Assembly: GCA_043228905.1 (NCBI GenBank)
Contig: JBHGNT010000007.1
Coordinates: 9,610,001-9,674,000 of the forward strand
DNA: 64,000 nt
From: Azolla caroliniana
Taxonomy: Eukaryota > Plantae > Polypodiophyta
Direction: 5' to 3'
Part shown: piece by piece, positions 17,145-64,000 of the stretch
Layout of the letters: each line of letters begins with the position of its first letter
How positions within the stretch are numbered: the stretch's first letter is position 1
Notes under the pieces: generated by a model
What the model was told of the DNA's origin: nothing
Seen by the model: the letters and a program-made list of their open reading frames with translations, nothing else
Databases searched by the model: none
Program-made: the position numbers and the translations under genes

Positions 17145-17155
17145 GGGGGAGATAG

Positions 17156-41082: not shown

Positions 41083-41153
41083 TTGGTTCTTGCGCATTTA
41101 ATCGATACGTGATGTATTTTATGTGTTAAGAATATTCAATTATTTCTAGCGAG

Positions 41154-41746: not shown

Positions 41747-42085
41747 GCATCAAGTTGAGTTCAGGTGGCATTTCATATGAAAAAAGTCTCATAATTGAGA
41801 AATACAAGTGATAAAACCTAGTGGTACCATAATATATGTCTAATGACATAATGTACATGTATTGGGTTACAATTGTGGTCTCTAATTCTAACTATCCATC
41901 AGTATTGAATTTAAAAGTAAAATACTGTTCAAAAACCTAAAGCATATCATGTGTCTTGCACATTTAATCGTTGAATTTAAAGGCTAAATAGTGTTCAAAA
42001 TCCTAAAGCGTATCATGTGTCTTGCGCATTTAATCGATACATGACATATTTTATTTGTTAAGAATATTCAATTATTTCTAGCGAG

Positions 42086-42157
42086 TCCATTGTAGTTTAC
42101 TTGGATGGGATACTCGGCTTTCACTACAGAAAATTGGGTTCCACTATGGCAATGGAA
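42086..42157 (+). pseudogene. tRNA-Glu-derived copy, type B
   Basis: Same subtype as 41154-41225. Confidence 0.7.
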
Positions 42158-42208
42158 GGATGATGTGATGTTTCTAGACATCTTAGGGAAAAAATGTTTC
42201 GTATATTA

Positions 42209-45200
42209 TGTTGAGAGACAAGCTCAACATCGGCCAGTTCGGCTGAAGAAGCCGAGGACCGGATCGGTTGGGACCGATCGGTTAGGCCGAGTGCGTACAC
42301 CGGGAGGTCGTTAGGAAAGATATTCCGTGAAGAATATATTTGGGAGTTAGTGTAGGAGCTCTTGATGAGGATTGAAGTACTATCAGTACTTCGGTCAGTC
42401 CTTCTAGGACTTGTATAAAAATGTTCACTGAGCACGTCTTATGTACAAACTGAGTATTATTGTTGAATATAGCTTTTTGTGTCTTCTCTCTGTCTCTCCC
42501 GCGTATACCGTGTAAGCTCAAGCTCTCCATTGAACCTGAGTTTCCTTCCTTCTGTTCGGTCTTCATACTTGCTTCCGCACGTTGCTTTCTACATGGTATC
42601 AGAGCGCGAGGGTTGAGAACCTCTCTGCAGCCGACACAGCTTGACGAAGAAGAACGAGAAGAACGATGGATAGAGGCATGGCGAGCTCGCTTCCAACAGA
42701 GAAGCTCGACAGAACCAACTACGCGTCTTGGTCCTACAAGATGCACCAGTACCTGCTCGGGCACGACTACTGGAGTTATGTCGAAGGAGCTAATGACGCG
42801 GCACCCGAATCAACACACAGAGACTTCCCGTTGTGGGAGCAATTTGCGAGCAGGGTATTGTACTGCTTCGCGTTGTGTGTGGGCGAACAACTATTGAGCT
42901 ATGTTCGGGATGCAAAGACGCCGAAGGGTGCGTGGGAAAATTTGAAGAAGATTTTCGCTGCGAGCACCACAGCTAGGAAGCTTCAGCTCCGACAGGAGTT
43001 GAGCAACCTACGACAACTCGACTTGTCGGTGGCGGACTATACCTCGAAGATCAAGGATATCTGCGACTCCCTCGCCTCCATAGAGGTGAACTGTTAGGAA
43101 ACAGGTCCCTCCGGATGGGAAGGGAGAAGAACAGTGCCGACGAACAAACTCGGCCGAGGCCGACAGGCCGAGACCGAAACGGTATGAACCGGATGAGGAG
43201 TACCCGCATGCGGAGAGCCGGATGGTGTAGGCCCGGTATGAACCGGATGAGAAGACATATTCGTAAATATGTCTCTGAGAGCCCATCGAGGCTACGTTTG
43301 TAAATAGCCGAAAAGTCATATTAGTATGAATATGACTTAGGGCAAACTTTTATGTGTGTCGTTTTGTTGTTGTCATTCTTGTTGTTGGTGCAAGAAGAAG
43401 AGTGAGCGCATAACTGTACAGAGTGAGAGAGAGAGAGAGAGAGACGAGGTCGTTGCCTCTGTTGTAACCGCCGCCTGTGGCGAAGATCTGAGAGCACGAG
43501 GTCGTTGCCTCAGTGAACTCACTGTTGTATATTCTTACATAGTGACAGTTTGCAGCCCATGGGCTGCCGTGGTTTTTCCCCTATTTTGGGGTTTTCCACG
43601 TAAACCTCCTGTGTACCATTTCTTCCCTTTGTGTCGCGTTTTTTTTATTACCTGTTTTTCTTTGTATGAAAAGAATCTCGGTTGTGGCCGAGCGTCGGAC
43701 ATAAGGAACGTCGAGTTCTCAACATGAACATCGAGGAGAGCGAGATGGTCCAGATCTGTCTCAGAGGTTTGGCGTCGAAGTTCGGAGCGTTCCGAACAGC
43801 TGTGTGTACCCGGGAGAATAAGCCGTCCTTTTTCGACTTACAGTCGATGCTCCTGGTAGAGGAGAACCACGCGGGTGCGTCGACGAGCACGCACACCGAC
43901 AACAAGATGTTGTACACGGAGGGAGAAAGGCCCCGTGGTAGTGGCGGACGAGGCGAGTCGGTACGCAATGGAAGCGGCCGACGAGATCAAGGAAGAAGGC
44001 ACCAAAGTGATGCCGACAGCAACTCCGGACCCTCCGGAAACAGAGGGAGTCGAAGCGATGAGAACCGGCAAGGGAAGGCCATCGCGGAGTGCTGGTACTG
44101 TGGCAAGAAAGGCCACAGGGAAAGTGAGTGCTGGAAGAAGCGCGCCGATTCGGAGAGAACTGGTTCTGGAAACGGCTCCAGACATACTGACAAGGGAAAT
44201 TGGCAGCGATCGCACTACGCCGAAGACTCCGGGAGAGCCGGAGAAGGGCATGCCTTCGTGATGAGACACGAAGCAAACTCAATGAAACAAAGCACCCCGG
44301 GATCGGACGAGGTGTGGTACGTAGACTCCAGCGCGTCAAACCACATGACGAGCCATAAGGAGTGGTTCTCGTACCTTGAAAAACCGATAGAACCTGGAGT
44401 AGTCGCAACAGGAGACGATACTCCGCATCCGATCGCGAATGTTGGAGAAGTTCCCCTTAGCCATGTCGGGCAGAAAGGGAAACTCATGAACGTGCTGCAC
44501 GTCCCGACAATCACGAAAAACTTGGTCTCGGTCGGACAGATCGTCGACCAAGGGATGGAGGTTCGGTTTACACACCTCGGGTGCTTCATTGAGGAAGAAG
44601 GCCGTGTGATTGCGCAAGGGCGCAGAGACGGGAGGATGTTCATCCTCGACTCCACTGACGGCGGCACCGCAATGTTCGCGAAGGAACAAAAGACCGAGTC
44701 GGACATCGACTTGTGGCACAAGCGGATAGGCCACGTCAACCACCAACGACTTCAAGATCTGCAATCGAAACAGGTAGTGTTTGGATTGCCCAAGTTTAGT
44801 GGCTGAAAGGCACAAGTTTGTGAAGCTTGCCAACTCAGGAAGCAACACCCACTTCCTTTCCCCAACGAGCGAAACCGGAGCCAGAACAAGCTCGACCTTA
44901 TACACTCCGATGTATGGGGACCGGCACAAAACGTTAGTCTTGGCGGGAGTCGATATTTCGTCTCCTTCATCGACGACCACACGCGACACAAGTGGATCTA
45001 CCTCATTGAGAGGAAGAGCGAAGTCTTCGACTGTTTCCGGGACCTCAAAGGGTTCGTGGAAGCCGAAACGGGACGAAAGATCAAGTGCTTGCGGTCGGAT
45101 GGCGGGAAAGAGTACTTTTCCGGTCAAGTCAACGGTTACCTACAACAAATGGGAATTCGCCGCGAATTCAGTTGTAGATACATGCCAGAGCAGAACGGCG

Positions 45201-48200
45201 TGGCCGAGAGAAAGAATCGGTCAGTTGTGGAAGCGGCACGGGCAATGCTGGAGGAGAAGAGCTTGCCCAAGTTCTACTGGGCCGAGGCGGTAAGGACCGC
45301 GGTATACATCCAAAACCGGATCGGAGACAAAGTGTCGGCGCACGAGCTATATTTCGAAACGAAGCCGAACTTGCGACACTTGTGGGTGTTCGGTAGCATT
45401 GCGTATGTGCATGTACCGAAGGAGAAAAGGAGGAAGCTGGACGCAAAGGCCGAGAAATGCATCTTGGTTGGTTACTCGGACGAGCAGAAGGGTTATAAGT
45501 GTTATAACCCTCGCACCAAACAAGCGCGTGTTAGCCGCGACGTTGTGTTTGACGAGTCCGCGTCCTGGTACCTGCCCCCGACTACGAACCTTGACTCCAA
45601 TCCGAGCTCTGACGATGAGGTCAGCGAGGCCGAGATGCCTCCGGATGAGCCCAAAATCGAGACCCGCGAAGAGAGTCCGATTTCGCTCTGTTTAAGTGGA
45701 CCGATTGGACGACTGAGTCGGTACGACCAGTCCGATGAAGAGACGGCGAGTAGTGGAGACTCGGCCGTGCATTCCCCGCGCAGGAGGCCGAGGAGATGGC
45801 TTACGTGCAAAGAGAAAGGGAAGAAGAAGGTGTCGGATTCCAGCACGGAAAGGAACGAGTCAGACCGACTCGAGTCCGACTCCGAGGGAACCGGTGACGG
45901 GTCTTTAAAGGCGAAGGCCGCGTCGACTGAGAAGGCCTCGACATCGGCTAATGTGAGATTACGCCGATCTACCCGCCAGAAGAATCCTGTTTTGCGGTTC
46001 GGATACAACGAGTAAATGGCGCATCATTATGCGTACATGACCCGTGTAGCGGAAGTGCGTGAGCCGGAGAGCTACGCAGAAGCGGCGAAGGATGCGAATT
46101 GGCGCGCCGCGATGGAGGAAGAGATGCATGCGTTGGCGGAGAATGAGACCTGGGACCTGGTTGACGCACCAATAGGGGTAAAATCGATCGGGTGTAGGTG
46201 GGTGTACAAGGTCAAGTACAACACCGATGGCTTGGTCAACCGGTACAAGGCTCAGCTAGTGGCAAAGGGCTACGCGCAGAAGCACGACATCGACTACGAT
46301 GAGACATTTGCGCCGGTCGCGAAAATGACGACTGTCCGTGTCTTGCTCGCAGTAGCCGCGGCCAAGGGGTGGCACTTACATCAGATGGATGTAAAGAATG
46401 CGTTCCTGCAAGGTGACCTTGAGGAACAGGTGTACATGGTACAACCCCCCAGACTTCACTCTGGAACGAACTCCTCGGCAGTATGCCAACTAAAGAAGTC
46501 CCTTTACGGATTGAAGCAAGCCCCGCGTGCCTGGAACGCGAAGATCACGCAACAATTGCGTCGGATGGGCTTCGTCACGTCAAAATCGGACTCTTCCTTG
46601 TTCATCCGGAAAGGTCGACTCGGACCGGTTAGTATTTTACTGTATGTTGATGACTTGGTCATCACCGGCGCCGACCTAGGTGAAATCGACCGCGTGAAGC
46701 TCCAGCTTGCGGCATTGTTCGACATGAAGGACCTGAGAGACCTTCATTACTTCCTCGGGATCGAAGTGATCCGTACCCCCCAAGGCATATTGATCAGCCA
46801 ACGTCATTACGTGCTGAGTATGCTCTTCAAACTCGAGATGGCCGACTGTAAGTCCATCTCGACTCCTCTGGACAGAACCGTCAAGCTTCGTCCCGATACG
46901 GGAAAGGTATGCGACCCGACGAGGTTCCGACGAGGTTCAGTGTGCGCAACATGTACTTCGGTACGTAAGCGGCACTAAGGACCACAGACTGCTATATCGG
47001 ACCGGTGCAACCGCGCAGTTAATCGGCTACACCGATGCTGATTGGGCTGGCAACACCGTCGATCGCCGATCCACGTCTGGATACGCGTTCTCCCTCGGGA
47101 GTGCCGCGATTGCGTGGTGCAGTAAGAAGCAGCCGACAGTTGCTCTGTCGAGCACCGAAGCTGAGTACTGAGGAGCGGCTGTCGCGACATGCGAAGGCAT
47201 ATGGTTGAAGCGGCTACTTAAGGACCTGCAAGAGGAGGTGACCGATCCAACGACGATCTACTGCGACAACCTCAGCAGCATCCAACTCGCGAAGAACCCC
47301 GTCTTCCACGCACGGACCAAGCACATTGAGGTGCACTACCATTTCGTCCGTGAGCGTGTCCTTTCCGGTGAAGTCGAACTTCAGTACGTTCCGACGGATT
47401 GGCAGGCTGCCGACATCTTCACCAAGCCTCTTGGTCTAGACAAGTTGCGGCAATTCTCAGGTGCGCTCGGGTTGCGTCACCTTGACGTGCCAAACTTGAG
47501 GGGGAGAACAGTCCTGAAAGAGCAAGCAAGGCAGCAGGAAAGGAGCGGACACCGCGACACCGAGTCAGTTGACAAGTTCGACATCGGATTGGCTGAAGAA
47601 GTCGAGGGCGGACCCGCGAAAAAGTTCGGAAGCAGACAGAAGGGGAGCAACCGAAGGAGAGAGCCGAAGCCAACCACGCATGGGGAAGATGACGCCATCG
47701 AAGGCGAGAAGACCGAAGACGAGTTGGAGACAGCCAACTCGGACAAGAGCGAAAACCGATCGGAGGTAGCCGAGTCGGTTCGGATGTTTGATTCAGACAC
47801 ATTGAATCAACCGAGGCCCAAGCGGAAGAAAAGGCAACAGAAGAAGTGTCGACACCGCAATAACAGAAGAGCTGATAAGGGCCGCATGAGCAGACGAGCC
47901 GACCGGAAGGGTCGAAGTGCGCGGAGTCGAAGAGGTCGAGGAGCGCGAGCGAGGCGTGAAGCCAGGAGGAACCAGAGCTGTGAGCCCGAGGATCCCGAAG
48001 AGCCTCGAGTTGAGCTTGAGGGGGAGTGTTGAGAGACAAGCTCAACATCGGCCGGTTCGGCTGAAGAAGCCGAGGACCGGATCGGTTGGGACCGATCGGT
48101 TAGGCCAAGTGCGTACACCGGGAGGTCCTTAGGAAAGATATTCTGTGAGGAATATATTTGGGAGTTAGTGCAGGAGCTCTTGATGAGCATTGAAGTACTG

Positions 48201-48411
48201 TCAGTACTTCGGTCAGTCCTTCTAGGACTTGTATAAAAATGTTCACTAAGCACGTCTTATGTACAGACTGAGTATTATTGTTGAATATAGCTTTTTGTGT
48301 CTTCTCTCTGTCTCTCCCGCGTATACCGTGTAAGCTCAAGCTCTCCATTGAACCTGAGTTTCCTTCCTTCTGTTCAGTCTTCATACTTGCTTCCGCACGT
48401 TGCTTTCTACA
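42209..48411 (+). mobile_element. Ty1/copia element C with both LTRs, decayed
   Basis: 385-bp LTRs at 42209-42593 and 48027-48411 (~11 substitutions by eye). TSD TATTA. PBS TGGTATCAGAGC at 42594; PPT GAGGGGGAG at 48018-48026. gag-PR-IN-RT(YVDD)-RH with stops and a deletion near 46930. Confidence 0.97.
43092..43724 (+). mobile_element. Solo LTR (Tnt1/Tork-like copia) inside the gag of element C
   Basis: TGTTAG...CTCAACA with TSD TGAAC (43087-43091 and 43725-43729). gag reads ..SIEVN|IEESEM across it. Shares the CCGTGGTTTTTCCC..GGGTTTTCCACGTAAA motif with the LTR at 60432-61090. Confidence 0.92.
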
Positions 48412-48916
48412 TATTACACACTCAATTCAAAAGTAGGTCTTACCATAAATATCTTATTAAATCTTATATACTATAGAGGGTTAGAATTATTGACTCTATT
48501 CCCAATCAAAGTCAATTCAAAATTAGGCCTTACCATAAATATCTTAATAAATCTTGTATGTTATAGTGGGTTAGAATTATTCACTCTATTCCCAAACATT
48601 TATGACTCTTTGAATTTGATAAAAAAATCGTCTTCTATAACATAAAGCTTAACATAATTGCCGATTGAACTCATTTTCACTCGAATAAAGGGTACGGGGT
48701 ATATTCTTTAATTAAAGTAATGACATTTCTCGATAATTCATTTAAGCGGATAAAATCACATTTCACTTAAAAGGAAACATACTTGAAGCTCTCCTTTAGT
48801 AAACCAAGAACCACAAAGGCAACCCTAGAATATCATCTGTCCTCTTACGTTTCCGCAATTTATGGTTAATTGACATTTTCATTTATTTAAGAGAAACATC
48901 CTTCACCTTTGTCAAC

Positions 48917-48989
48917 GACATTGTAGTCTAGTTGGTTAGGATACTCGGCTTTCACTCAAGCGACTTGGGTTCAAGTCCCGACATTGGAA
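48917..48989 (+). pseudogene. tRNA-Glu(TTC) pseudogene, type A
   Basis: A and B boxes present; acceptor and anticodon stems mismatched. Confidence 0.75.
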
Positions 48990-49593
48990 ACATCAAGTCT
49001 AGTTTAGGTTGCATCTCATACAAAAAAAAATCTTATAATTGATTGACCAATGCAAGACATAAAACGTTGTGGTGACATAATCTACATGTATTGGGTTACA
49101 ATTGTGGCCTCTAATTCCAAATATTCATAAGTATTGAATTTAAAAGTATAATACATGTTCAAAAACCTAAAGCATATCATGTGTCTTGTGCATTCAAAAT
49201 TTGGTCTTTCCAGAAATATCTTATTACATCTTGTATGTTATAGTGGGTTACAATTATTCACTCTATTCCCAATCATCGATGGGTCTTTGAATTTGATAAA
49301 AAATTCGGCTTCTATAATACAAAGCTTAAGATAATTGCCGATTGAACTCATTTTCACTTGTATGAAAGGTAAGAGGTATATTGTTTAATTAAAGTAACAA
49401 CATTTCTCGATAATTCATCAAAGATGAAAAAATCACATTTCACTTAAAAGGAAACATACTTGAAGCTCCTCTTTAGTAATCCAAGAACCACGAAGGCAGC
49501 ACTAGGATATCATGTGTCATCTTGTGTTTCCACAATTTATGGTTAATTGACATTTTCTTTTATTTTAGAGAAAAATCCTTCAACTTTGTCAAC

Positions 49594-49666
49594 TCCATTG
49601 TAGTCTAGTTAGTTAAGGTACTCGGCTTTCACCCGAGCGACCCGGATTCAAGTCCCGGCAATGGAA
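49594..49666 (+). pseudogene. tRNA-Glu(TTC)-like copy, near intact
   Basis: Acceptor stem TCCATTG/CAATGGA and anticodon arm CTCGG-CTTTCAC-CCGAG are perfect; D-loop GG and one T-stem pair are mutated. Confidence 0.8.
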
Positions 49667-49804
49667 ACATAAAGTCTAGTTCAGGTTGCATCTTCTACGG
49701 AAAACGTCTCATATGACAAATACAAGACATAAAACGTTGTGGTGACATTATCCACATGTATTGGGCCTCTAATTCCAAATATCCATAAGTATTGAGTTTA
49801 AAAG

Positions 49805-49862
49805 TGTAAAGAATCAAGAGATTGATTCTTGTGAAGCAGAAGTGATATGAGTTATGTGTGTG

Positions 49863-49907
<45 letters not shown>

Positions 49908-52900
49908 AGGAATACACAAGGTAAAGGTATATTGACAAAGGAGAAAGACTCAACATTATACAAGGTGGGAGGAAGGCTCATGGAGCATGGGGAATGTGAA
50001 AGCTCATAAGTTATGTGTCATAGAATATGATTCTATGACTCATACTAAATGCTAGAATACAAAGTGGTGACATAATGGTGACTCTTGACCGTTGAGGTGT
50101 CTCTTCACTCTCAAGGTGAGTTCACACACTAGACCAAGTTGAGCTTGATTCTCAACACGCCCCCTGAAGCTCAAGTCGGGTCAGTTTCAGACGGTATCCG
50201 AAATCCGCTTCAATTCACGTTCGGGAGTCCGCGTCGACTCGCTTTATGTGGAGTTGCGGAATCTGTGCTCCAGTTGTGCGTAGTTACGAAGTCTGTGCTT
50301 CGGCTTGCGTGCGTAGTTGCGAAGTCTGTGCTTCGGCTTGCGTGCGTAGTTGCGAAGTCTGTGTTTCGGCTTGTGTCTTTCTTCGCGGCTTTGCGCGGTA
50401 GATCGGCTCTTTGTTGCTACGGTGTGTGGTTTCGGAATCTACGCGTTATTGCGTAGTGTCTTCAGTACTCCCCCTCAAGCTTGGCAGATTAGGGATCGTC
50501 AATCCGAGATCGGTCATGAATTGCCATAGCTTGTCGGCTCCTAAGGCTTTAGTGAAGATGTCGACCGTTTGAAGATTGGTGCTTATGTGTTGTAGATCGA
50601 CATCGCCAGCCAAAACGCGCTCTCGGATGAAGTGATAGTGCACTTCGATGTGCTTTGTCCTCGCGTGGAACATCGGGTTCCGAGCCAGATAGATACTGCT
50701 CATGTTGTCGCAGTAAAGGGAAGTCGGATCCTTGATGGGTACGCCCAGATCCTTCAAAATCCTCTTGAGCCATACGGCTTCACACGCAGCTACGGTTGCG
50801 CCCCTGTATTCCGCCTCCGTACTCGAAAGAGCGACGATGGGCTGCTTCTTGCTACTCCAGAATAATTCTCCGCTGCCAAGGGAGAAAACAAATCCGGAGG
50901 TTGATCTTCTATCGGCTTTGTAGCCGGCCCAATCGGCGTCTGTGTACCCCTCGAGTCGTATTGGCATCGCGGTCTTGTAGAGGATGCCGCAATCCATTGT
51001 GCCGCTCACGTACCGTAGAACTCGCTTAGCGCAATCCAAGTGAGTATCACGCGGTGTTTGCATGAATTGGCTAAGGAGACCGACCGGATAACTGAGATCG
51101 GGTCGAGTGATCGTGAGGTAGATGAGACTCCTGATGAGTTGCCGATACTGAGTCGGCTCACACGCTTTGGTGCCGGAGTTTGCATCTAGTTTGAGATTAC
51201 GATCGAGCGGGGTTGCCACGGATTTGCACTCAGCCATCCCGAACTTGTATAATAAGTTGAGGATGTAGTGCCGTTGAGAGATCATGATTCCGGCCGGAGT
51301 CCGAATTACCTCGATGTCGAGGAAGTAGTGGAGCTCCTTCATGTCTGTCATCTCGAACTTGTCGGAAAGGAGGGATTTGACCTTATTGATTTCGACGAGA
51401 TGCTCACCTCCAATGACTAGGTCATCCACATATAAAATGATGACGATCGGACTTGCGGAATCGCTTCGTATGTAGAGGGAGTTGTCTGATTTTGACATAC
51501 GGAAGCCGATTTGATGAAGATATTGCGTTATCTTCGAGTGCCAAGCACGCGGTGCTTGCTTGAGGCCATAGAGTGGCTTCTTGAGTCGGCATACAACTTT
51601 CGGATGGGTGCTCGAGTTGAAGCCGGGTGGTTGTAGCATGTACACCTCCTCTTCTAATTCGCCTTGTAGAAAGGCGTTCTTGACGTCCATTTGATGGAGG
51701 TGCCACCCTTTCTCCGCGGCAATCGCAATTACGGTACGCACCGTCATCGTCTTTGCCACTGGGGCAAAGGTTTCTTCGTAGTCGACGTCATGTGTCTGAG
51801 CGTATCCTTTCGCTACGAGTCGAGCTTTGTAGCGGTTGACGGAACCATCGACGTTATACTTCACCTTGTAGATCCCACGTCTCGTTCTTCCGTAGTGCCT
51901 ACATCTCCTCATTCATTGCTTCGATCCATCGAGGGTCCTTCACGGCTTCCGAAAAGGTTTCCGGCTCCCGTACTGTCGCTACTTTCATCATAAAGGCGTA
52001 ATGGTACGCCATGTAATTGTTGTAGCCGAATCGACTTACGGGGTTCTTTTCACGAGTGGATCGGCGGACCTTTTCATTTGCAGAGATGAGGGCTTTCTTT
52101 GCTCCGATTGGTACCTCGAAACCGCCGAACTCACTGTCGAGTGAGTGAGTTGACTCATCGTTGGTGAAGCGATTGTCTTCGTATTCCACCATTTTCGCCT
52201 TGCCTTTGTCCATCTTCGGGCTAGGCCGTGATGTGCTTTGATCGCTCAAAGGCTCTTGTGGTCCACTCAGTCGGGTCGTGATCGGACTTTCTTCGAACAT
52301 GCGCGTAAGGTGATCTTCATCCTCTATCTCTTGTTCGATGGATTCCGGGTCGAGCGGGGTCGGAGTCGAAGTTGTCTCTGGTGCGTACCAGGATGCAGAC
52401 TCGTCAAAGACGACGTCTCGACTTACTCGAGATTGTCGAGTTGAAGGGTTGTAGCACTTGTACCCCTTTTGCTCCAGTGAGTATCCTACGAGGATACATT
52501 TCTCCGACTTCGGGTCGAGCTTTTGACGCTTCTCGTCGGGGATGTGCACGTACGCAATGGAGCCGAATATCCGAACATGTGATAAGTTCGGCTTCTTTCC
52601 AGATGTCGTGCACCGGTTCATTAGGTAGATGGTCGTATTTGCCGCTTCGGCCCAATATGACTTGGGCATATGCTTCTCGTTCATCATGGCCCGCGCTACT
52701 TCGAGGATGTGCCGATTTTTGCGCTCGGCTACTCCGTTTTGTTGCGGAGTGTGTCGGCAAGTGAATTCTCGTTGAATTTCTTCCTTTCGGAGATATGCTG
52801 TGAAATCGTCCGAGAAGTACTCCTTGCCGCCATCCGATCGAAGGCATCGTACATGTCGGCCCGTGGCTTTCTCGACTTCATTCTTGAAATTTTGGAAGTG

Positions 52901-54947
52901 TCCGAACACTTCGCTCTTTTGCCGCATCGGGTAGATCCAAGTGTGCCTAGAAAAGTCGTCGATGAAGAGCACGTAATAGCGGCATCCGCCGAATGTCGCC
53001 GTTTGAGCTGGACCCCATACATCGGAATGAATTACGTCGAGTACGCCTTTGCTCACATTCCGCTCCTTCGGAAATGGGTGTCAGTGTTGCTTGCCGAATT
53101 GGCACGCTTCGCATACACCTTCAATCTCCTTCTCTTTGAATGTCGGGAGTCCGATGACGACTCCTTTCGATTTCATTGGTTTGAGTTTGTTGAGATTGAT
53201 GTGGCCGATTCGCTTATGCCATAGCTCTATGTCGGAGTCGGCTTTTGTGCTTTTCGCGACCATGGCGGATTTCATCTCGTGCGAATTGAGAATGAACATC
53301 CGGCCCTCTCTTCTTCCACGTGTGATGATTCAGCCTTCTTTTTCGATGAAGCACCCTTCTTGGTCGAATCGTACTTGCATCCCTTGCTCAACCATTTGGC
53401 CGACCGAGACCAAATTCTTTGTGATGGTGGGTACATGCAAGACATTTTTAATGTATGTTTGTTTACCTCTTTCACTGAAGGGAACATTGCTGATGTGCCG
53501 AATCGGGTGCGTAGTGTCATCTCTGGTTTCCACATAACCGGGTCGCTCCGGCTCTCGAAGTTCAAGAAACCATTCTTTGTGGGATGTCATATGGTTTGAG
53601 GCTCCGGAGTCAACAAACCATACGTCTTCCGGACCGGAGGCACTAGTTGAGGTAGTGGCTGACATAGAGTTTGCTCTATGTTTCATCATGAACATTCCGC
53701 CACGGTCGGAGTTGTGCGCATACATTCCGCCACGATCTTCGTAGTCGGAGTTGTGTGCGTAATTCGTGAGTTGTCGGCTTGTGGAAGCCGATTCACGCAT
53801 CTTCTTTTGGCACTCGTCTTCGTGGTGGCCGAGCTTTCCGCAATATCCACATTCGGTTGTGTTTTGACGGCTCGGGCCGGAGTGGAAGCTCCCCCTTCTT
53901 GCGAAGGTTCCTCGTTGGCCTCGGTTTTGCGACCGAAATTGGGAGTTGCTGTTGTAGGTCGGACCTCATCATCATCTATACTTACGCTTATTGAGCCGAG
54001 CAAGTCGCAAAGCTCCTTGATCTTCAAGGTGTATGTCGTGATGGACATGTCCCTTTGTTGAATGTTTTTCAACTCTTGGCGGAGTGGAAGCTTCCTCGCG
54101 GTCGTGTTGGCGGCGAAAATCTTTCGTAGATTTTCCCACGCTTCCTTCGGCGTCTTGGCTTCTCGAATGTAGCCGAGCATGTGGTCGTGAACACATGTTG
54201 CCAAACAATACATCACGCGGCTTGCGGCTTGCTCCCATGTCGCGTATCCAGGAGCCGCTTCGGCGGGTCGGTCTTCATGCGCTCCTTTGATGTAGCTCCA
54301 ATAGCCTTGTCCGACAAGGTATTGATGCATCTTGTACTCCCAAGATGCGAAGTTGTTTCGATCCAACTTCTCGGTAGGGAGAGCGCTCACCATTTGAGTA
54401 TTCATTATGTCAATTCTTCTTCTTCTTCTTCTCTCTTCGAATGCGAGCTATGTAGCGAAGCTACGATAGCTATGAGCCGGTTCTTGGTCGTCGGCGTAGA
54501 TCACAACACACGATCACGATGAGGCGAATGGGCTAGATCGAGCTACCAAATCGCTCCGATACCATGTAAAGGATCAAGAGATTGATTCTTGTGAAGCAGA
54601 AGTGATATGAGTTATGTGTGTGTATGAGAGAGAGAGAGAGAGAGAGTGAGAGAGACAAGGAATACGCAAGGTAAAGGTATATTGACAAAGGAGAAAGACT
54701 CAACATTATACAAGGTTGGAGGAGGGTGCTTTATGTAGTCACTCTCTCTCTTCATTAACTACAAGGCTCATGGAGCATGGGGAATGTGAAAGCTCATAAG
54801 TTATGTGTCATACAATATGGTTCTATGACTCATACTAAATGCTAGAATACAAAGTGGTGACATAATGGTGACTCTTGATCGTTGAGGTGTCTCTTCACTC
54901 TCAAGGTGAGTTCACACACTAGACCAAGTTGAGCTTGATTCTCAACA
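49805..54947 (-). mobile_element. Ty1/copia element D with both LTRs and small internal deletions
   Basis: 3' LTR 49805-50157, 5' LTR 54565-54947, TSD AAAAG (49800-49804 and 54948-54952), PBS 54553-54564. ORFs: gag 53686-54405, protease 53330-53800, integrase 51899-53056, RT/RH 50446-51912. Confidence 0.97.
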
Positions 54948-55405
54948 AAAAGTATAATACGTGTTGAAAACCTAGAGCGTATCATGTCTCCTACGCATTC
55001 AAAATTAGGTCTTACTATAAATATCTGATTAAATCTTGTATGTTATAGTGGGTTAGAATGATTCACTCTATACCCAATCATCAATGACTCTTTGAATTTG
55101 ATAACAAATTTGTCTTGAATAAAATAAAGCTTAACATATTAGCCGATTGAAGTCATTTTGACTCATATGAAAGGTACGAGGTATATTGTTTAATTAAAGT
55201 AATGACATTTCTCGAAAATTCATTCAAGGGGATAAAATCACATTTCACTTAAAAGGAAACATACTTGATGCTCTCCTTTAGTAAACCAAGAACCACGAAG
55301 GTAACACTAGGGTATCATGTGTCATCTTGCGTTTCCTCAATTTATGGTTAATTGAGATTTTCTTTTATTTTAGAGAAACATCCTTCAACTTTGTGAACTC
55401 CATAC

Positions 55406-55478
55406 TCCATTGTAGTCTAGTTGATTAGGATACTCGGCTTTCACCCGAGTGACCCGGGTTCAAGTCCCGACAATGGAA
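55406..55478 (+). tRNA. tRNA-Glu(TTC), best-preserved copy, probably a pseudogene
   Basis: TCCATTGTAGTCTAGTTGATTAGGATACTCGGCTTTCACCCGAGTGACCCGGGTTCAAGTCCCGACAATGGAA: cloverleaf except D-loop GG>GA and one T-stem mismatch. No adjacent oligo-T terminator. Confidence 0.55.
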
Positions 55479-55973
55479 ACATCAAGTCTAGTTCAAGTTG
55501 CATCTTATAGGAAAAAAGTCTCATAATTGACAAATACAAGACATAAAAGCTTGTGGTGACATAATCTACATTTATTGGGTTACAATTGTGGCCTCTAATT
55601 CCAAATATCTATACGAATCGAATTTGAAAGTATAATAATACGTGTTGAAAAACCTAAAGCATATCATGTGACTTGCGCATTCAAAATTAGGTCTTACCAT
55701 AAATATCTTATTAAATCTTGTATGCTATAGTGGCTTAGAATTATTCACTCTATTCCCAATCATTGAGGAATCTTTTAATTTGATAAAAATTTCGTCTTCT
55801 ATAACATAAAGCTTAACATATTAGCCGATTGAACTCATTTTCACTCGTATGAAAGGTACGAGGTATATTGTTTAATTAAAGTATCGACATTTCTCGATAA
55901 TTCATACAAGGAGATAAAATCACATTTAACTTAAAAGAAAACATACTTGAACCTCTCCTTTAGTAAACCAAGA

Positions 55974-58285
55974 ACCATTGTAGTCTAATTGGTTAGGATA
56001 CTCAGCTTTCACCGGAGCGACTCGGGTTCAAGTCCAGCCAATGGAAACATCAAGTGTAGTTAAGGTTTTAGCTTATACGAAAAAAATCTCATAATTGAGA
56101 AATACAAGACATAAAACGTTGTGGTGACATAATCTACATGTATTGGGTTACAATTGTGGCCTGTAATTCCAACTATCCGTACTTATCGAATTTGAAAGTA
56201 TAATACATGTTGAAAAACCTAAAGTGTATCATGTGACTTCATAATTAGGTCTTACCATAAATATCTTATTAAATCTAGTATGTTATAGTGGGTTAGAATT
56301 ATTCACTCTATTCCCAATCATTGAGGAATCTTTTAATTTGATAAAATTTTTGTCTTCTATAACATAAAGCTTAACATATTAGCCGATTGAACTCATTTTC
56401 ACTCGTATGAAAGGTACGAGGTATATTGTTTAATTAAACTATCGGCATTTCTCGATAATTCATACAAGGAGATAAAATCACATTTCACTTAAAAGGAAAT
56501 ATACTTGAAGCTCTGCTTTAGTAAACTAAGAACCACGAAGGCAACACTGGGATATCATGTGTCATCTTGCGTTTCTGCAATTTATGGTTAATTGACATTT
56601 TCTTTTATTTTAGTGAAAAATCCTTTAACTTTGTCAACACCATTGTAGTCTAATTGGTTGGGATACTTGCATTTCACCCGAATGACCTGGGTTCAAGTCC
56701 CGGGAATGGAAACATCAAGTGTAGTTCAGGTTGCATCTTACACGTAAAATGTCTCATAATTGACAAATACAAGACATAAAACCTTACGGTGACATAATCT
56801 ACATGTATTGGGTTACAATTGTGGCTTGTAATTCCTAATATCCATACTTATCGAATTTGAAAGTATAATACGTGTTGAAAAACCTAAAGCATATCATGTG
56901 ACTTGCGCATTCATAATTAGGTCTAACCATAAATATCTTATTAAATCTTGTATGCTATAGTAGGTTAGAATTATTCATTTTATTCCCAATCATTGAGGAA
57001 TCTTTTAATTTGATAAAAAAATTGTCTTCTATTACATTAACCTTAGCATAAAATGCCGATTGAACTCATTTTCACTCGTATGAAATTTATGAGGTATATT
57101 GTTTAATTGCTGGTTAGCGGGAATATTTTACCTGTGATGCACTGTACGGTAACGAGGTATATTATTTAATTAAAGTAACAACATTTCTCGATAATTCATT
57201 CAAGGGGATAAAATCATATTTCACTTTAAAGGAAACATACCTAATGGTCTTCTTTGGTAAACCAAGAACCACGAAGGCAACACTAGGATATCATGTGTCA
57301 TCTTGCGTTTCTGAAATTTATGTTTAATTGATATTTTCTTTTATTTTAGAGAAACATCCTTCAATTTTGTCAACGTCATTGTAGTCTAGATGGTTAGAAC
57401 ACTCGGCTTTCACCCGATTGACCCGGGTTCAAGTCCCAGAAAGAAGCTAAAGCGTATCACGTTATTTCGCCATTTATTGTTAATTGAGATTTTCTTGAAT
57501 TTCAGAGAAAAATCCTTTAACTTTGTAAACTCTGTTGTAGTCTACTTGGTTGGGATAGTTGGATTTCACCCAAACGACTTGGGTTCAAGTCTCGGGAATG
57601 GAAACATGAAGTGTAGTTCAGGTTGCATCTTACACGAAAAATGTCTCATAATTGACAAATACAAGACATAAAACCTTGCGGTCACATAATCTACATATAT
57701 TGGGTTACAATTGTTGCCTCTAATTCTAAATATCCATAAGTATTGAATGTATTGGGTTACAATTGTTGCCTCTAATTCCAAATATCCATAAGTATTGAAT
57801 TAAAAAGTATACTACGTTACTTGTTGAAAAACTTAAAGCGTATCATGTGTCTTGCATATTCAAAATTAGGTCTTACCATAAATATCATATTAACTCTATT
57901 CCCAATCATGGATGACTCTTTCAATTTTTTAAAGACTTTGTCTTCTACAACATAAACCTTAACATATTAGCCGATTGAACTCATTTTAACTCGTATGAAA
58001 GGTACAAGGTATATTGTTTAATTAAAGTAACGACATTTCTCGATAATTCATTCAAGGGGATAAAATCAAATTTCACTTAAAAGGAAACATACTTGAAGCT
58101 CTCCTTTAGTAAACCAAGAACCATGATGGCAACACGAGGATATCATGTATCATTTTGCGTTTTCACAATTTATGGTTAATTGAAATTTTCTTTTATTTTA
58201 GAGAGACTTCAACTTGATCAACTCTAGTTGGTTAGGATAATTGGATTTCACGTGAGTGACCTGGGTTCAAGTCCTGGCAATGGAA
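55974..58285 (+). pseudogene. Five further degenerate tRNA-Glu copies (55974-56046, 56639-56711, 57375-57437, 57531-57603, ~58223-58285)
   Basis: Each keeps recognisable A-box/anticodon sequence and GGGTTCAAGTC, with stem mismatches or truncations. Confidence 0.75.
57109..57152 (+). other. NUP107-derived filler sequence inserted in the array
   Basis: 57114-57147 is identical to 37722-37755 (intron acceptor TTAG plus the start of exon 20), flanked by a ~20-bp duplication of array sequence. Confidence 0.92.
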
Positions 58286-58437
58286 ACATTAAGTCTAGTT
58301 TTGGTTGCATTTTATACGAAAAAAGTCTCAGAATTGACAAATACAAGAAATAAATCCTGGTGGTGATATAATCTACATGTATTGGGTTACAATTGTGGCC
58401 TCGAATTCCAAATATCCAGAAGTATTGAGTTTGAAAG

Positions 58438-60431
58438 TGTAAAGAATCGGTTATGATTCTTGTGTAGCATAAGAGATGTGTGTTATGTGTATGAGTGAGA
58501 GGAATTAGAGGAGAGATGACGAAACACAAGATAGATAGAAAAAGGAATACTCAAGAAGAAGGTGTATATTGCACAAGTAGAATAAGAATTACAAAATGTA
58601 GCATAATAAGGAGTCACAACCGACTTAGTATGAAGTGTGAGGAGGGTGCTTTATATATAGTCACCCTCTCTCTTCATTAACTAACTACAACAACCACTCT
58701 CTCTCTTGGGGAATGTGAAGACTCATAGTCATGGGGAATATGTAACTCATTAGTTATGTGTCATAGAATATGATTCTATGACACATAGTTAATGTGTAGA
58801 GGGTGGTGGTGTGTCTGTTGACCTTTGATTCTCAAAAGGTGTGTGCACACGTTGTGCTATGTTGAGCTTGATTCTCAACACGCCCCCTGAAGCTCAACTC
58901 GGGTCGGTTCCTTTTGATTGATGTCCGCTTCGGCTGGTATCCGGTTCGGACGATCTCCGGTGTCCATTTCGGCTTGTAACTGGTTCGGACGGTATCTGGT
59001 TCTCGCTTGTACTCCCCCTCAAGCTCAGCAAGTCAGGGATCGTCAATCCAGTCATCCAGAACTTTTATAACAAGTTGAGGATGTAGTGCCGTTGAGAGAT
59101 CAAAATGCCGGTCGGAATTCGAATTACTTCTATGCCAAGGAAGTAATGGAGCTCCTTCATGTTCGTCATCTTGAATTAGCCGGAGAGGAGGGACTTGACC
59201 TTGTTGATGTCGACTAGACTTTCACCTCCAATGACCAGATCATCCACGTATAGGATGATGACAATTAGGCTTCTAGAGTCGTGTCATACGTAGATGGAGG
59301 TGTCGGATTTCGACATTCGAAAGCCGTTTTGATGAAGATATTGCGTAATCTTCGAATGCCAAGCACGTGGTGCTTGCTTGAGGCCGTAGAGTGGCTTCTT
59401 GAGTCGGCACACGGCTTTCGGATGAGTACGCGATTCGAAGCCGGGTGGTTGTACCATGTACACCTCCTCTTCTAATTCGCCTTGAAGATAGGCGTTGTTG
59501 ACGTCCATTTGGTGGAGGTGGCACCCTTTTGTTGTTGCAAGTGCAATCACGGTCCGCACTATCGTCATCTTTGCCATTGGGGCAAAGGTCTCTTGATAGT
59601 TGATTCCATGTGTTGCTACCTTCATCATAAAGGCATAATGGTATGCCATATAATCATTGTAGCCGAATCGGCTTACGGGGTTCTTTTCACGGGAGGATCG
59701 ACGGAGCTTCTCGTTTGCGGATACTACAACTTTCTCCGCTCCATTTGTCCGGATCTCAAGGCCTTCGAACTCACTGTTGAGGGAGTGAGTCGATTTGTTG
59801 TTGTCGAAGTGATCATCTTTATACTTCGGCATTTTTGCCTTCCCTTTGTCCAGCTTCGGACACGACCGAGATGTGCTTTGATCGCCTGGGGGCTCTTGTG
59901 GCCCACGTTGCATAGTCGGCGTCTTCCGGGTCGGGTCCGTTTTCCTGTGCTCCCTTGATGTAACCCCAGTAGCCTTGGCCGACAAGGTATTGGTGCATCT
60001 TGTACTCCCAAGATGCGAAGTTGTTTCGGTCCAACTTCTCGCTAGGGAGAGCGCTCTCCACTTGAGTATTCATTGTCGATTAAGCTTCCTTTCTTCTTTT
60101 CCTTCTCTTTCAAACACGAGCTATGTAGTGGTATTGCGATAGCGATGAGCCGGTTCTTCTTGAACGTTGGCGTAGAGCACAACACACGATCACGATGAGC
60201 CGAGTGGGCTAGATCGAGCTACCAAATTGCTTTGATACCATGTAAAGAATTGGGTATGATTGTTGTGTAGCAGGAGAGATGTGCCTTATGTGTATGAGTG
60301 AGAGGAATTAGAGGAGAGATGAGAGAACACAAGATAGATAGAAAAAGGAATACTCAAGAAGAAGGTGTATATTGCACAAGTAGAATAAGAATTACAAAAT
60401 GTAGCATAATAAGGCGTCACAACCGATGGAG
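58438..60431 (-). mobile_element. Ty1/copia element E, internally deleted (non-autonomous); 5' LTR interrupted by element F
   Basis: 3' LTR 58438-58880, PPT at ~58881-58890, PBS 60229-60240, 5' LTR from 60241 matching 58438. Gag N-terminus is fused to the post-integrase linker, with partial RT. Confidence 0.9.
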
Positions 60432-63400
60432 TGTTGAGAAATCGATGCGGAATAGATCACAATAAATGAACTACGCGCTGAAATACGAATTATAGAAATA
60501 TGCCAAGAAAAAAAAGACAATGAACAATGATGCACAGAGATTTACGTGGAAACCCTAAAACGGGGAAAAACCACGGATGAACAGAATCTTCACTATACAA
60601 AGTGGATATACAACACTGAGAGGAATACAACACTCTGTTGAGTGTATCAGCCGCACAAGACTCTTCGCGTCTGTTGTTACTCACACAGCTATGGTGCGGC
60701 TCACACACACACACTCTCTTTTCGCTCTCCTGCACAGTACTCTGTTCGTCTCACTGACACACAAACCAAAAGTTTGCATTAGTTTCATATATACTTACGC
60801 AACTTTCTGGCTATTTACATACCTAGCCCACATGGGGAGCACATCTAGATTATTTACAATTATAGTCTCCCGAGTTGGCTATGTACACGATTCCGGTTTC
60901 GACCGAGGCCCATCAACTTGGCTCTTCTCTCTCCCCATCCGGAGAGACATGTTTCCTAACATCATCATTATTATTACCATAATAATAATAGCCGAATTCT
61001 CAAACAGTCGACTCATTGTTTTCGACTCTTCGACTGTCGGCTTTCCGAATAGTCGGCTCTTCCTTCCACTGGAGGGGCATATTCCCAACAAACTCCCCCT
61101 TCACTCCTGTGGGAGGAAATCTGTCAGTCCTGTATTTTGTCGACAGACTCTGAGTCTGTCCATAGGTAGGTTCTTCGTTAGCATGTCAGATCCATTGTCG
61201 TCGGTATGGATCTTCACAAGGGAAAACTCTCCTTCTTCGACACTCTCCCACAACCAGTGATACCTTCTCTGTATGTGCTTGGTCCAGGAGTGGTATGCCG
61301 CGTTCTTGGCTAGGTGTATGGTGCTTTGATTGCCATAGTGAAGCAAGAAATCCTTTTGCTCCATGCCTAGTTCGATGAGAAAATTTCTCATCCAGATCAG
61401 CTCTTTTCCGGCCTCTACCGCCGCGATATACTCTGCCTCTGTAGTCGACAAGGCTATAGACCTCTGCAGTCATGATTGCCACGACACTGCTCCCCCTACA
61501 TAGGTCATCATGTACCTTGACGTGGATTGGCTTCAGTCGGTATATCCAGACATGTCCGAATTAAACCTTCCAGCACAGGTTTTCCGACACCATACCTTAG
61601 GCACACCTCTGAGGTGTCTTTCAGGTACCTGAGTATCCACTTCACTGCTGCCCAATGTTCTCTCCCTAGATTACTCATATATCGGCTTATTGCTCCCATA
61701 GCAAATTCTATGTCCGGTCTCGTACAAACCATAGCATACATTAGACTGCCGACGGCTGAGGCATATGGTCCCTTCTTCATCTCAGCCTTTTCCTTCTGCC
61801 CTTTCCGACACTGCTTCGCATTCAATCTGCAATTTGTCGGCAACATTGAGCCAACCGGCTTTGCGTTCGACATGTTGAACCTTTCTAGGATCTTCGTCAC
61901 ATACTTTTGTTGTGACAACCATAGCACCTTTCGAGCTCTGTCTCGGATTATGTGCATTCCTAGGATTTGCTTTGCCGGTCCAAGGTCTTTCATGGCAAAT
62001 GATTTGCCAAGAACTTTCTTCTAGCTTCCAATCTTCCTTGTGTCTTGACCGACTATCAACATATCATCAACATATAGCAAGAGAATCAAGAAATCTCCTT
62101 CCTCGTACCTTTTGATGAACACACAGTGATCAGCCTGTGTTTTCTGGAACCGATGTTCCATCATGAAGGACTCGAATTTCTTGTACCATTGGCGTGGAGC
62201 TTGTTTCAGTCTGTACAAGCTTTTCCTCAGTTGACACACCGGATTCTCTTTCCCTTTCTCCTCAAAGCCTTTGGGTTGCTGCATGTAGATTTCTTCTTCT
62301 AGCTCCCCGTGCAGAAATGTGGTTTTGACACCCAACTGTTCGATCTCCAGGTCCATGCTGGCCGCTATGCTCAGAATAGTTCGTATGGATGTCATCTTCA
62401 TGACTGGTGTGAATATTTCGTCAAAGTCGAAGCCCTTCCTTTGTTGGAAACCCTTCACCACTATGCAGGTTTTATACCTGGGCTCGCTGTCGACTTCTCT
62501 AGTCTTCACCTTGTAGACCCACTTATTCCTGAGTGCTCTCTTACCTTTTGACAGCTCTACTAGGTCATAGGTGTAATTCGCGTGCAAGGATTCCATCTCC
62601 TCTTGCATCGCGCTCGGCCATTTTTCTTTGCTCTCGTCGGCAATGGCTTCTTCATAGCACTCCGGTTCACCGTCATCAGTCAAGAGGATGTATTGACTGG
62701 AATATGTAATCGGTGCCTTCCTTTCTCTGAGTGGTTACCTTCGTCCACTCGTTGTTGGCTCTTTTCTGGATGTCTTTGCCAACTCTTCTCTTTGCTCGGG
62801 ATTCTGTTCATCAATCGGCATCTCTAGGTTGGACAACTCCAACTCATATTCCTCAATTGATTTTAGCAGGTCTGCCGACTCAGACTCATAGTCTTTCAGT
62901 TTTTCTGAGTCGACTGACTCGGATTCGGCTCTGTCGGCCAACTGTCTCCTTACAGCTGTCGGTGACGACTCACTTGGCCTTAAGTCGATGGTAGTCAAGG
63001 TTGACTGGGGAGTCGGTTTCAACTTCTGTTGCTTCTAGTCTTCAATTGTCTTGTCTTCTAGAAAGACTACATCCTGACTTCTCACTACCTTCTTGTCGAG
63101 TAAGTCCTAGAACCTGTAGCCGAACTCATCTTCCGAGTATCCCATGAATATGCATGCTTTCGACTTGCTGTCGAGCTTTGACCTCTGATCTTTTGGTACA
63201 TGCATATACGCCAAACATCCAAACACCCTCAGGTGTTGGTAGGAGACATCCTTCCCTGTCCACACCCTTTGTGGGACATCAACCTTTAATTGCACTGAGG
63301 GAGACCTGTTGATCAGATAAAAAATTGTGTGCAACGCCTTAGCCCAATAGGATTTCGACAGTTTCGCATGAGAGAGCATGCTCCTGACTCTCTCCATGAT

Positions 63401-64000
63401 CGTTCGATTCATCCTGTCTGCAAGCCCGTTCAACTTTGGGGTCTTTGGTACGGTGTATTCAATTCGAATACCTTGGCTCTTGAAGTATTCTTCGAATTGC
63501 CCTCTGTACTCTCCACCGTTGTCGGTTCGAACAACCATCAGTTTCCGACCTGACTCTCTTTCGGTTCTTGCCTGGAACTCCTTGAAAACCAACAATACTT
63601 TCTCCTTCGTCTTTAGGACAAAGGCCCATGTCTTTTGACTATGGTCATCAATGAATGTCACGAAGTACTGTCCACCTCGATGCGATGGAGCATCCACATA
63701 GCACACATCCGTGTGTACTAATTCCAGTGCAACTTCTCTTCTCCTCGGTGGTCTCAAGTCGAATGCCGTCCTGTTCTGCTTTCCGGCTAAGTAGTCAACA
63801 CACTTCTCCAGGTGCACTCCCTTCACTTCTGGTAGAAGTTTTTGGTCTGCTAACAGGTGCATTCCCTTCTCAGTCATGTGGCCTAGCCTTCTATGCCATA
63901 TCTCCCCTGCAGAGTCGGCTGCCATGTTTACTTCCGATTTGCACAGTCGGGCATGCATCATGTACAATGTGCCTTCTTTCTGTGCTCGGGCCACTATAAG
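60432..64000 (-). mobile_element. Tnt1/Tork-like Ty1/copia element F (3' LTR 60432-61090; continues beyond the window)
   Basis: Integrase (LVHTDVC, RTDNGGEY), RT (NKWVYK, LLYVDDML) and RNase H (STTEAEY, TKHIQRRYH); PPT GAAGGGGGAG before TGTTGGG; frameshifted. Confidence 0.93.

What the first reader, a model, noticed from the sequence alone, without database searches (positions are those of the whole stretch)
49790..58445. Two different copia subfamilies inserted at the same nucleotide of the tRNA-Glu repeat unit: possible site-targeted retrotransposon/tRNA-array system
Seen: element D sits in ...GTATTGAGTTTAAAAG^TATAATAC (junction 49804/49805, TSD AAAAG). Element E starts after ...GTATTGAGTTTGAAAG^ (58437/58438), the homologous base of another unit, in the same orientation and ~140-150 bp 3' of a tRNA-Glu copy. 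Each element's two LTRs resemble each other more than the other element's, so these look like separate subfamilies and separate events. Both occupied units carry a GAGTTT variant where the empty units I read have GAATT. A third copia (C) lies ~50 bp 3' of a type-B copy. Established: Pol III-gene targeting is known for yeast Ty1/Ty3 and Dictyostelium TRE elements; I do not know of nucleotide-precise targeting by plant copia. Inference: either targeted integration into these arrays as a safe harbour, or duplication of one occupied unit followed by replacement of the element through recombination between related LTR ends.
Basis: partly seen in the sequence, partly recalled or inferred. Interest (0 to 1): 0.85.

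Follow-up and report, generated by a model that had tools for sequence, protein, structure and literature searches.

The report
Two copia insertions, same satellite site
Two different copia retrotransposons did insert independently at exactly the same base of two copies of a tRNA-Glu-derived satellite repeat. About 100 other insertions of the same LTR lineage lie at unrelated places, so this looks like a coincidence helped by a weak sequence preference, not a dedicated targeting system.

Summary
Copia D (49805-54947, minus strand, TSD AAAAG on both sides) and copia E (from 58438) both follow GTATTGAGTTT[A/G]AAAG. They sit at the homologous base of a ~683-bp tRNA-Glu unit, in the same orientation.

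They are separate events:
- LTR-pair K2P is 0.021 for D and 0.062 for E, against 0.33-0.37 between D and E.
- Each element has closer LTR relatives at unrelated loci. An AU test rejects a D+E clade (p=1.4e-4).
- The two flanking units are not sisters. Their private branches (0.07, 0.09) are longer than either element's age.

So duplication of an occupied unit is rejected.

Targeting is not supported. I found 79 unique right flanks and about 27 left flanks of the same LTR lineage in 324 kb of plant contigs. All differ, none holds the satellite, and no whole tRNA gene lies in them. The lineage has only a weak target consensus (A-W-W-W-not-A, then AT-rich), under which this site ranks 40-70 of ~680. 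The chance of a same-site, same-orientation pair is ~0.003, or roughly 0.05-0.1 after allowing for the other arrays scanned in this genome.

With n=2 a local hot spot cannot be excluded. E's far junction lies outside the window, behind a nested copia.

The parts
49147..49804 (+). tRNA-Glu satellite unit left of D (D_left). It holds a well-kept tRNA-Glu(UUC) copy at 49594-49666 and ends in the target AAAAG (49800-49804).
   Evidence: ARAGORN; Rfam tRNA 56 bits; unit HMM hit 49149-49804
49805..50157 (-). Copia D, 3' LTR (353 bp; reads TGTAAAG...CTCAACA on the + strand). PPT complement follows at 50158-.
50158..54564 (-). Copia D internal region with several frameshifts. On the minus strand: gag (53686-54405), Pol_BBD (53330-53800), integrase rve+SH3 (51899-53056), RVT_2 (50446-51912). 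The PBS complement at 54553-54564 reads TGGTATCGGAGC on the element strand.
   Evidence: ORFs; Pfam; sequence
54565..54947 (-). Copia D, 5' LTR (383 bp). It is followed by the second TSD copy AAAAG at 54948-54952, then TATAATAC.
54948..58437 (+). Five whole or rearranged tRNA-Glu units between D and E. Their copies of the site are empty, at 55630/31, 56198/99, 56863/64 and 57807/08. The last unit (E_left, 57808-58437) ends in GAAAG (58433-58437), and its tRNA remnant (to ~58285) is decayed.
58438..58880 (-). Copia E, 3' LTR (443 bp). PPT complement follows at 58881-.
58881..60240 (-). Copia E internal remnant (~1.35 kb). Only a partial RVT_2 ORF remains (59284-59985). The PBS complement at 60229-60240 reads TGGTATCAAAGC on the element strand.
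60241..60426 (-). Copia E, 5' LTR, first 186 bp only. It is broken at 60426/60427 by a nested element.
60427..64000 (-). Nested copia F (integrase and RVT_2 ORFs on the minus strand). It runs off the window and hides the rest of E's 5' LTR and E's far flank.
42209..48411 (+). Copia C, a different family with LTRs 97% alike and TSD TATTA. It is inserted at another place in the array, 51 bp 3' of a type-B decayed tRNA copy.

Best explanation
D and E are two ordinary Ty1/copia LTR retrotransposons. They belong to two subfamilies of one very abundant lineage whose LTRs read TGTTGAGAATCAAGCTC...ATTCTTTACA on the element strand.

Shown:
- They integrated at different times. E came first and D roughly three times later, judged from LTR-pair divergence.
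- They used the homologous 5-bp target ([A/G]AAAG) of two units of a tRNA-Glu-derived satellite that had already diverged from each other.
- The lineage as a whole is not aimed at tRNA genes or at this satellite. Its integrase shows only a weak target preference: A-rich first TSD base, A/T in the middle, non-A last base, then AT-rich G-poor flanks.

Inferred:
- The shared site is a coincidence made somewhat likelier by that weak preference, and possibly by local chromatin. It is not the product of a dedicated site-targeting mechanism.
For: Independence of the two events:
- LTR-pair K2P is 0.021 (D) and 0.062 (E), against 0.33-0.37 for D versus E.
- In trees of both LTR ends, D's two LTRs pair at 100/100. 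E's two LTRs group with L096 and L083, which come from unrelated loci.
- AU tests reject a D+E clade (p=1.4e-4) and a D3'+E3' clade (p=2.8e-5).
- D_left and E_left share a single exclusive character, no more than random unit pairs do.
- Their terminal branches of 0.068 and 0.09 exceed the per-lineage LTR ages of 0.010 and 0.031.

No general targeting:
- 120 contigs carry the conserved LTR end. They give 79 unique non-PPT right flanks and about 27 left flanks, all different.
- nhmmer with the unit profile finds no unit in 324 kb. ARAGORN finds only one partial tRNA-His at a contig edge.
- Laid contigs of four runs show LTR word depth ~1e5 against 1e2-1e3 over the units. 33-59 contigs per run (X1, X2 and X12; no such row is listed for X3) run on into unlike sequence behind 54947.

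Weak preference only:
- Under a symmetrised weight matrix from the 79 flanks, the site ranks 40-70 of ~680 positions, with P about 0.004-0.005.
- The collision probability is ~0.006, or ~0.003 with orientation.
- G at -10 is not preferred in other flanks: 3 of 30 on the left, no bias at the mirror position.

Pol III link: the tRNA copy beside E is not detected by Rfam at E<=1.
Against: - A same-base, same-orientation hit has p about 0.003 per pair.
- Both occupied units, and none of 11 empty ones, carry G at -10 (Fisher p about 0.013 before multiple-testing correction).
- The flank sample comes from low-coverage metagenome assemblies, which under-assemble satellites. Insertions inside arrays are therefore under-sampled.
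- I could not reach other arrays of this genome to test for a positional peak.
Confidence: 0.55

Rival explanations
1. There is a genuine local integration hot spot. Something about this position in the satellite channels copia integrases of several subfamilies to this base, about 140-150 bp 3' of the tRNA copy. Candidates are phased nucleosomes on the array, a TFIIIC/TFIIIB-bound A/B-box remnant, or DNA bendability of the AT-rich stretch. The elements would still insert elsewhere in the genome without such precision.
For: - Two independent events share base and orientation: 2 of 13 site copies are filled, with p about 0.003 per pair.
- Independence is firmly shown.
- Both occupied units carry G at -10.
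- A and B box-like motifs survive in both neighbouring tRNA copies (sequence).
- An unchecked scan note (s1-497455) reports three retroelements clustered in another part of the unit in a different window.
- Known precedent: the integrase C-terminus steers copia Tal1 into centromeric tandem repeats through CENH3 chromatin (PMC11735389).
Against: - There are only two events.
- C and a 20-nt LTR-end relic seen in a contig of run X1 lie at other unit positions.
- The tRNA copy next to E is decayed.
- Nucleosome- or factor-based hot spots are usually tens of bp wide, not one base.
- None of ~106 lineage flanks elsewhere lies near a whole tRNA gene.
Confidence: 0.3
2. An older element sat at this site in one unit. 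The occupied unit was duplicated. The residents were later replaced by D-type and E-type sequence through recombination or gene conversion with ectopic elements or their cDNA, using homology of the related LTR ends.
For: - The extreme LTR termini are shared by all subfamilies: TGTAAAGAAT at one end and 20 nt ending CTCAACA at the other.
- G at -10 is shared by both flanks.
- cDNA-mediated conversion of resident elements is established for yeast Ty1 (from my own knowledge, not checked here).
Against: - Subfamily-specific differences begin 11 nt from the outer LTR end. That leaves almost no homology outside the converted tract.
- Two separate whole-element replacements would be needed, because both LTR pairs (0.021, 0.062) are much younger than the split of the flanking units (path 0.16).
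- The units show no sister signal beyond one character.
Confidence: 0.07
3. There was a single ancient insertion. The occupied unit was then duplicated, and the two LTRs within each copy were homogenised by intra-element gene conversion.
For: The divergence of the flanking units (path 0.16) is of the same order as, though smaller than, the D-E divergence of internal regions (77-84% identity).
Against: - Intra-element conversion cannot make D and E each resemble copies at unrelated loci more than each other. D's 5' LTR is 95% identical to L118 and E's 3' LTR is 95% identical to L096.
- AU tests reject a D+E clade (p=1.4e-4).
Confidence: 0.03

Closest known systems
Ordinary plant Ty1/copia LTR retrotransposons with short LTRs and a tRNA-iMet PBS (proteins of this kind are labelled RE1/RE2/TNT1-like by databases)
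   Same: - TG...CA LTRs of 350-440 bp, a 5-bp TSD, a PBS complementary to initiator tRNA-Met, and a PPT.
- Domain order gag, protease region, integrase, RVT_2.
- Weak, roughly palindromic AT-rich target preference.
   Different: Nothing essential differs. D is frameshifted, and E is internally deleted and carries a nested element. The lineage (Ale, Ivana, etc.) was not determined.
Tal1 / ATCOPIA93-type centrophilic copia of Arabidopsis lyrata (integration into centromeric tandem repeats via CENH3 chromatin; PMC11735389)
   Same: A copia element found inside a tandem repeat array. A region-level bias is set by the integrase C-terminus.
   Different: Tal1 puts most of its new copies into the satellite. 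Here 0 of 79 sampled right flanks of the lineage lie in the tRNA-Glu satellite. No nucleotide-precise position within the monomer is claimed for Tal1 in the passages read.
Pol III-gene-targeting retrotransposons: yeast Ty3 (at the transcription start), Ty1 (upstream window), Dictyostelium TRE5/TRE3 and DGLT-A (PMC5911963, PMC5006619, PMC6101501; titles and abstracts seen)
   Same: D and E lie at a fixed distance (138 and 152 bp) 3' of a tRNA-derived sequence, in a fixed orientation.
   Different: Those families show the distance rule at essentially every copy. Here none of ~106 flanks of the lineage has a whole tRNA gene nearby. The tRNA beside E is decayed. The fixed distance follows simply from both targets being copies of one repeat unit.

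Membership tests
Ty1/copia LTR retrotransposon | Two direct LTRs bounded by TG...CA and flanked by a 5-bp target-site duplication | tested here: met
   D has LTRs at 49805-50157 and 54565-54947, with AAAAG on both sides. For E, both LTR starts and the left target copy were seen, but the far TSD is not in the window.
Ty1/copia LTR retrotransposon | Integrase encoded upstream of reverse transcriptase (gag, PR, IN, RT-RH), with RVT_2-type RT | tested here: met
   On D's minus strand: Retrotran_gag_2 at 53686-54405, Pol_BBD at 53330-53800, rve+SH3_retrovirus at 51899-53056, RVT_2 at 50446-51912. E keeps only an RVT_2 fragment.
Ty1/copia LTR retrotransposon | PBS next to the 5' LTR and a polypurine tract next to the 3' LTR | tested here: met
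   The PBS reads TGGTATCGGAGC (D) and TGGTATCAAAGC (E) on the element strand. The PPT complement CGCCCCCT follows both 3' LTRs. The match to tRNA-iMet is from my own knowledge of the canonical TGGTATCAGAGC.
Pol III-gene (tRNA)-targeting retrotransposon (Ty3, Ty1, TRE, DGLT-A kind) | Most copies of the family lie at a characteristic distance from tRNA or other Pol III genes | tested here: not met
   ARAGORN on 120 contigs (324 kb) holding LTR ends of the lineage found one partial tRNA-His at a contig edge and no tRNA-Glu. The flanks are all different.
Satellite-targeting (centrophilic-type) copia such as Tal1 | Strong enrichment of the family's insertions inside one tandem repeat | tested here: inconclusive
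   0 of 79 unique right flanks lie in the tRNA-Glu unit (upper 95% bound about 4%). LTR depth is ~100-fold above unit depth. However, low-coverage assemblies under-represent satellites.
Sequence-specific integration (one defined target sequence) | A strong shared motif at the insertion sites of independent copies | tested here: not met
   Only a weak A-W-W-W-B plus AT-rich pattern appears in 79 flanks. The D/E site ranks 40-70 of ~680 in its unit. G at -10 is not shared by other flanks.

The most novel reading that the evidence does not exclude
The tRNA-Glu satellite holds a true, nearly nucleotide-precise integration hot spot about 140-150 bp downstream of each tRNA copy. Several copia subfamilies use it, set by Pol III factor remnants or phased chromatin on the array. 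This would be the first Pol III-linked or satellite-phase-linked positional targeting of LTR retrotransposons described in a plant.
Probability: 0.15. Interest if true: 0.75.

Novelty: new member of a known kind. Interest (0 to 1): 0.3.

Why it matters
If a positional hot spot were real, it would give a plant counterpart to the tRNA-gene 'safe harbour' targeting of yeast and Dictyostelium retrotransposons. It would also offer a handle on how integrases read chromatin on tandem repeats.

As it stands, the locus is a clean example of homoplasious insertion: two independent LTR-retrotransposon insertions at the homologous base of paralogous repeats. That is a caution for anyone who treats shared insertion sites in repeats as evidence of common descent or of duplication.

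Tried and rejected
1. Duplication of an occupied unit: rejected by the LTR trees, AU tests and divergences.

2. A relic satellite unit next to the third LTR end of the lineage (18150-18340, flank AAAAC ATATCC...): the unit HMM finds nothing there.

3. A possible unit next to L106, a D-clade LTR whose flank holds TATAATAC: nhmmer --max is blank, so it is not a unit.

4. Reaching other arrays through ORFs that run through the unit. Two protein searches (window:58248-58529:- and window:57569-57799:-) found no candidate. These blanks mean only that such short ORFs are not on record.

5. Exact look-up of D's RT ORF: not on record. The close protein relatives P0042 and P0009 sit on contigs L001 and L002, which hold no flanks.

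6. The species could not be named. Run and organism names are coded, and the closest proteins come from unnamed ENA metagenome contigs.

7. Read laying at 80% likeness showed diverse loose ends at the LTR end. Most loose-end rows are not shown, so a positional peak within the units could neither be seen nor excluded.

8. Literature searches found no description of this satellite or of tRNA-linked copia targeting in plants.
Full report
**What is there**

The window is plant DNA, dense in transposable elements. It holds arrays of a ~683-bp tandem unit built around a tRNA-Glu(UUC) copy. The arrays lie at 18885-21922 (minus strand), 41073-42208, 48417-49804 and 54948-58437 (plus strand). The tRNA copies range from well kept to undetectable. 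The copy at 49594-49666 scores 56 bits and the one at 55406-55478 scores 59.5 bits, while the copy in the unit just left of E gives no match at E<=1. Earlier notes of this scan describe the same satellite in several other windows of this genome (s1-509377, s1-497353, s1-504147, s1-512358). I treated those notes as leads only.

**The two elements**

D spans 49805-54947.
- Its LTRs are 49805-50157 and 54565-54947.
- Both sides carry AAAAG, and the right flank continues TATAATAC, exactly as in empty units.
- D is encoded on the minus strand, in the order gag, Pol_BBD, rve+SH3 and RVT_2.
- A tRNA-iMet-type PBS abuts the LTR at 54565, and a PPT abuts the LTR at 50157.
- D is therefore a Ty1/copia element, now frameshifted.

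E starts at 58438, directly after GAAAG, in the same alignment column and orientation.
- Its 3' LTR is 58438-58880.
- The interior is reduced to ~1.35 kb with a partial RVT_2 ORF.
- Its 5' LTR begins at 60241 and is cut at 60426/60427 by a further copia (F) that runs off the window. E's far junction therefore cannot be read here.

C (42209-48411, TSD TATTA, plus strand) is another copia family, inserted at a different unit position 51 bp 3' of a type-B decayed tRNA copy.

**One event or two?**

LTR-pair divergence is K2P 0.021 for D (7 differences in 343 sites) and 0.062 for E (11 in 186). D versus E LTRs differ by 0.33-0.37.

I scanned the metagenome collection for the 20-nt LTR end that is invariant in D, E and a third copy. 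The scan returned 120 contigs of plant DNA, L003-L122. Trees built from these gave:
- Last 200 nt of the LTR: D's two LTRs fall in a starred clade with L015, L118 and L106. E's LTR falls in a starred clade with L096, L083 and L088.
- First 186 nt: D3'+D5' pair at 100/100, and E3'+E5' group with L096 (96/91).
- AU tests reject a clade of all four window LTRs (p=1.4e-4) and a clade of the two junction-side LTRs (p=2.8e-5).

So each element has closer relatives at unrelated loci than it has in the other element. Gene conversion within an element cannot produce that pattern.

The flanking units give the same answer.
- The unit tree is a star. D_left and E_left are neither joined nor excluded as sisters (p-AU 0.39).
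- Their terminal branches are 0.068 and 0.09, several times the per-lineage age of either element.
- They share exactly one exclusive character, the G at -10, which is no more than random pairs of units share.

I conclude that E inserted first and D later, each into a unit that was already a separate lineage. Duplication of an occupied unit is rejected. Replacement of an older resident by recombination is unlikely, because subfamily-specific differences begin 11 nt from the outer LTR end, and because two whole-element replacements would be needed.

**Is the lineage targeted?**

After removing internal (PPT) junctions and non-LTR matches, the 120 contigs give 79 unique right flanks. A search for the other LTR terminus gives about 27 further left flanks.
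- All flanks differ, including those of the nearest relatives of D and E.
- A profile HMM of the unit finds no copy in the 324 kb, and ARAGORN finds only a partial tRNA-His at one contig edge.
- Contigs of four public runs, laid at 80% likeness on 54600-58800, show LTR word depth near 1e5 but only 1e2-1e3 over the units.
- In that same call, 33-59 contigs per run (X1, X2 and X12) continue behind 54947 into unlike, mutually different sequence.
- The unit is held by organisms A and B but not by organism D, which holds only the tRNA part.

The flanks show a weak target pattern: A at TSD position 1 (49%, T 9%), A/T at positions 2-4, A-poor position 5, then three AT-rich, G-poor positions. Under a symmetrised weight matrix built from this pattern, the D/E site ranks 40-70 of ~680 positions in its unit, with probability 0.004-0.005 against 0.0015 for a uniform model. 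The probability that two insertions into a unit collide is ~0.006, or ~0.003 with orientation. G at -10 is not favoured in other flanks.

**How to read the coincidence**

For this window alone the coincidence has p of about 0.003 for the D-E pair, or ~0.009 if C is counted. The scan has notes on more than a thousand windows of this genome, and at least eight hold the satellite.

With only two events I cannot separate 'chance plus weak preference' from 'a real local hot spot'. I rate them 0.55 and 0.30.

Against a precise Pol III-linked mechanism:
- The tRNA beside E is decayed.
- tRNA genes are absent near the other copies.
- Insertions exist at other unit positions. C is one. A 20-nt A2-type LTR-start relic inside a unit variant, seen in a contig of run X1, is another (table 5c).

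In favour of a hot spot:
- The coincidence itself.
- The shared G at -10.
- An unchecked note of three retroelements clustered elsewhere in the unit (s1-497455).
- The precedent that a copia integrase C-terminus can steer integration into tandem repeats through chromatin (PMC11735389).

**Limits**

- The flank sample comes from low-coverage assemblies that may be of a close relative rather than the same strain, and such assemblies under-sample satellites.
Two protein-word searches with unit ORFs came back blank.

Noticed in passing
window 60427-64000: A further copia (F; integrase and RVT_2 ORFs on the minus strand) is nested in E's 5' LTR. Its LTR seems to end near 61084, just before a PPT-like C-rich run. 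It runs off the window.
   Followed up: partly
window 5672-8455 and 18150-18340: A D-like copia (A2) has its 5' LTR (from 8241) broken near 8456 by a LINE-like element with an endonuclease-type ORF start. The LTR tail at 18150-18340 (ending CTCAACA, flank AAAAC ATATCC) may be the rest of that LTR, about 10 kb away beyond nested insertions. The flank is not satellite.
   Followed up: partly
window 11913-17588: A young LTR element whose LTRs (11913-12349 and 17153-17588) are 99.8% identical. It is probably the most recent insertion in the window.
   Followed up: no
window 21952-22270 and 40913-41072: The inverted satellite arrays (18885-21922 minus, 41073- plus) each abut a fragment of copia internal sequence, and the two fragments are in opposite orientations. 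This suggests an inversion or rearrangement with breakpoints in a copia element. A scan note says a NUP107 gene lies between the arrays.
   Followed up: no
window 49865-49905 and 54625-54655; 54724-54763: D's LTRs hold a (GA)n microsatellite of different length in the two copies. The 3' LTR lacks 40 bp that are present in the 5' LTR.
   Followed up: yes
run X1 contig laid at 56333 / 55373 (table 5c): A satellite-unit variant elsewhere in the genome carries a 20-nt match to an A2-type LTR start (TGTAAAGAATCCATGGTGAT) in place of about 24 nt of unit sequence upstream of the tRNA. It may be the relic of an insertion that was later deleted, at a different unit position from D and E.
   Followed up: partly
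window 25255-25972: Three tandem copies of a ~240-bp repeat, 97-98% identical.
   Followed up: no
laid runs X1-X3 versus X12: The satellite spacer is present in organisms A and B. In organism D only the tRNA part and the copia LTRs find matches, so the satellite is lineage-restricted while the copia lineage is older.
   Followed up: partly
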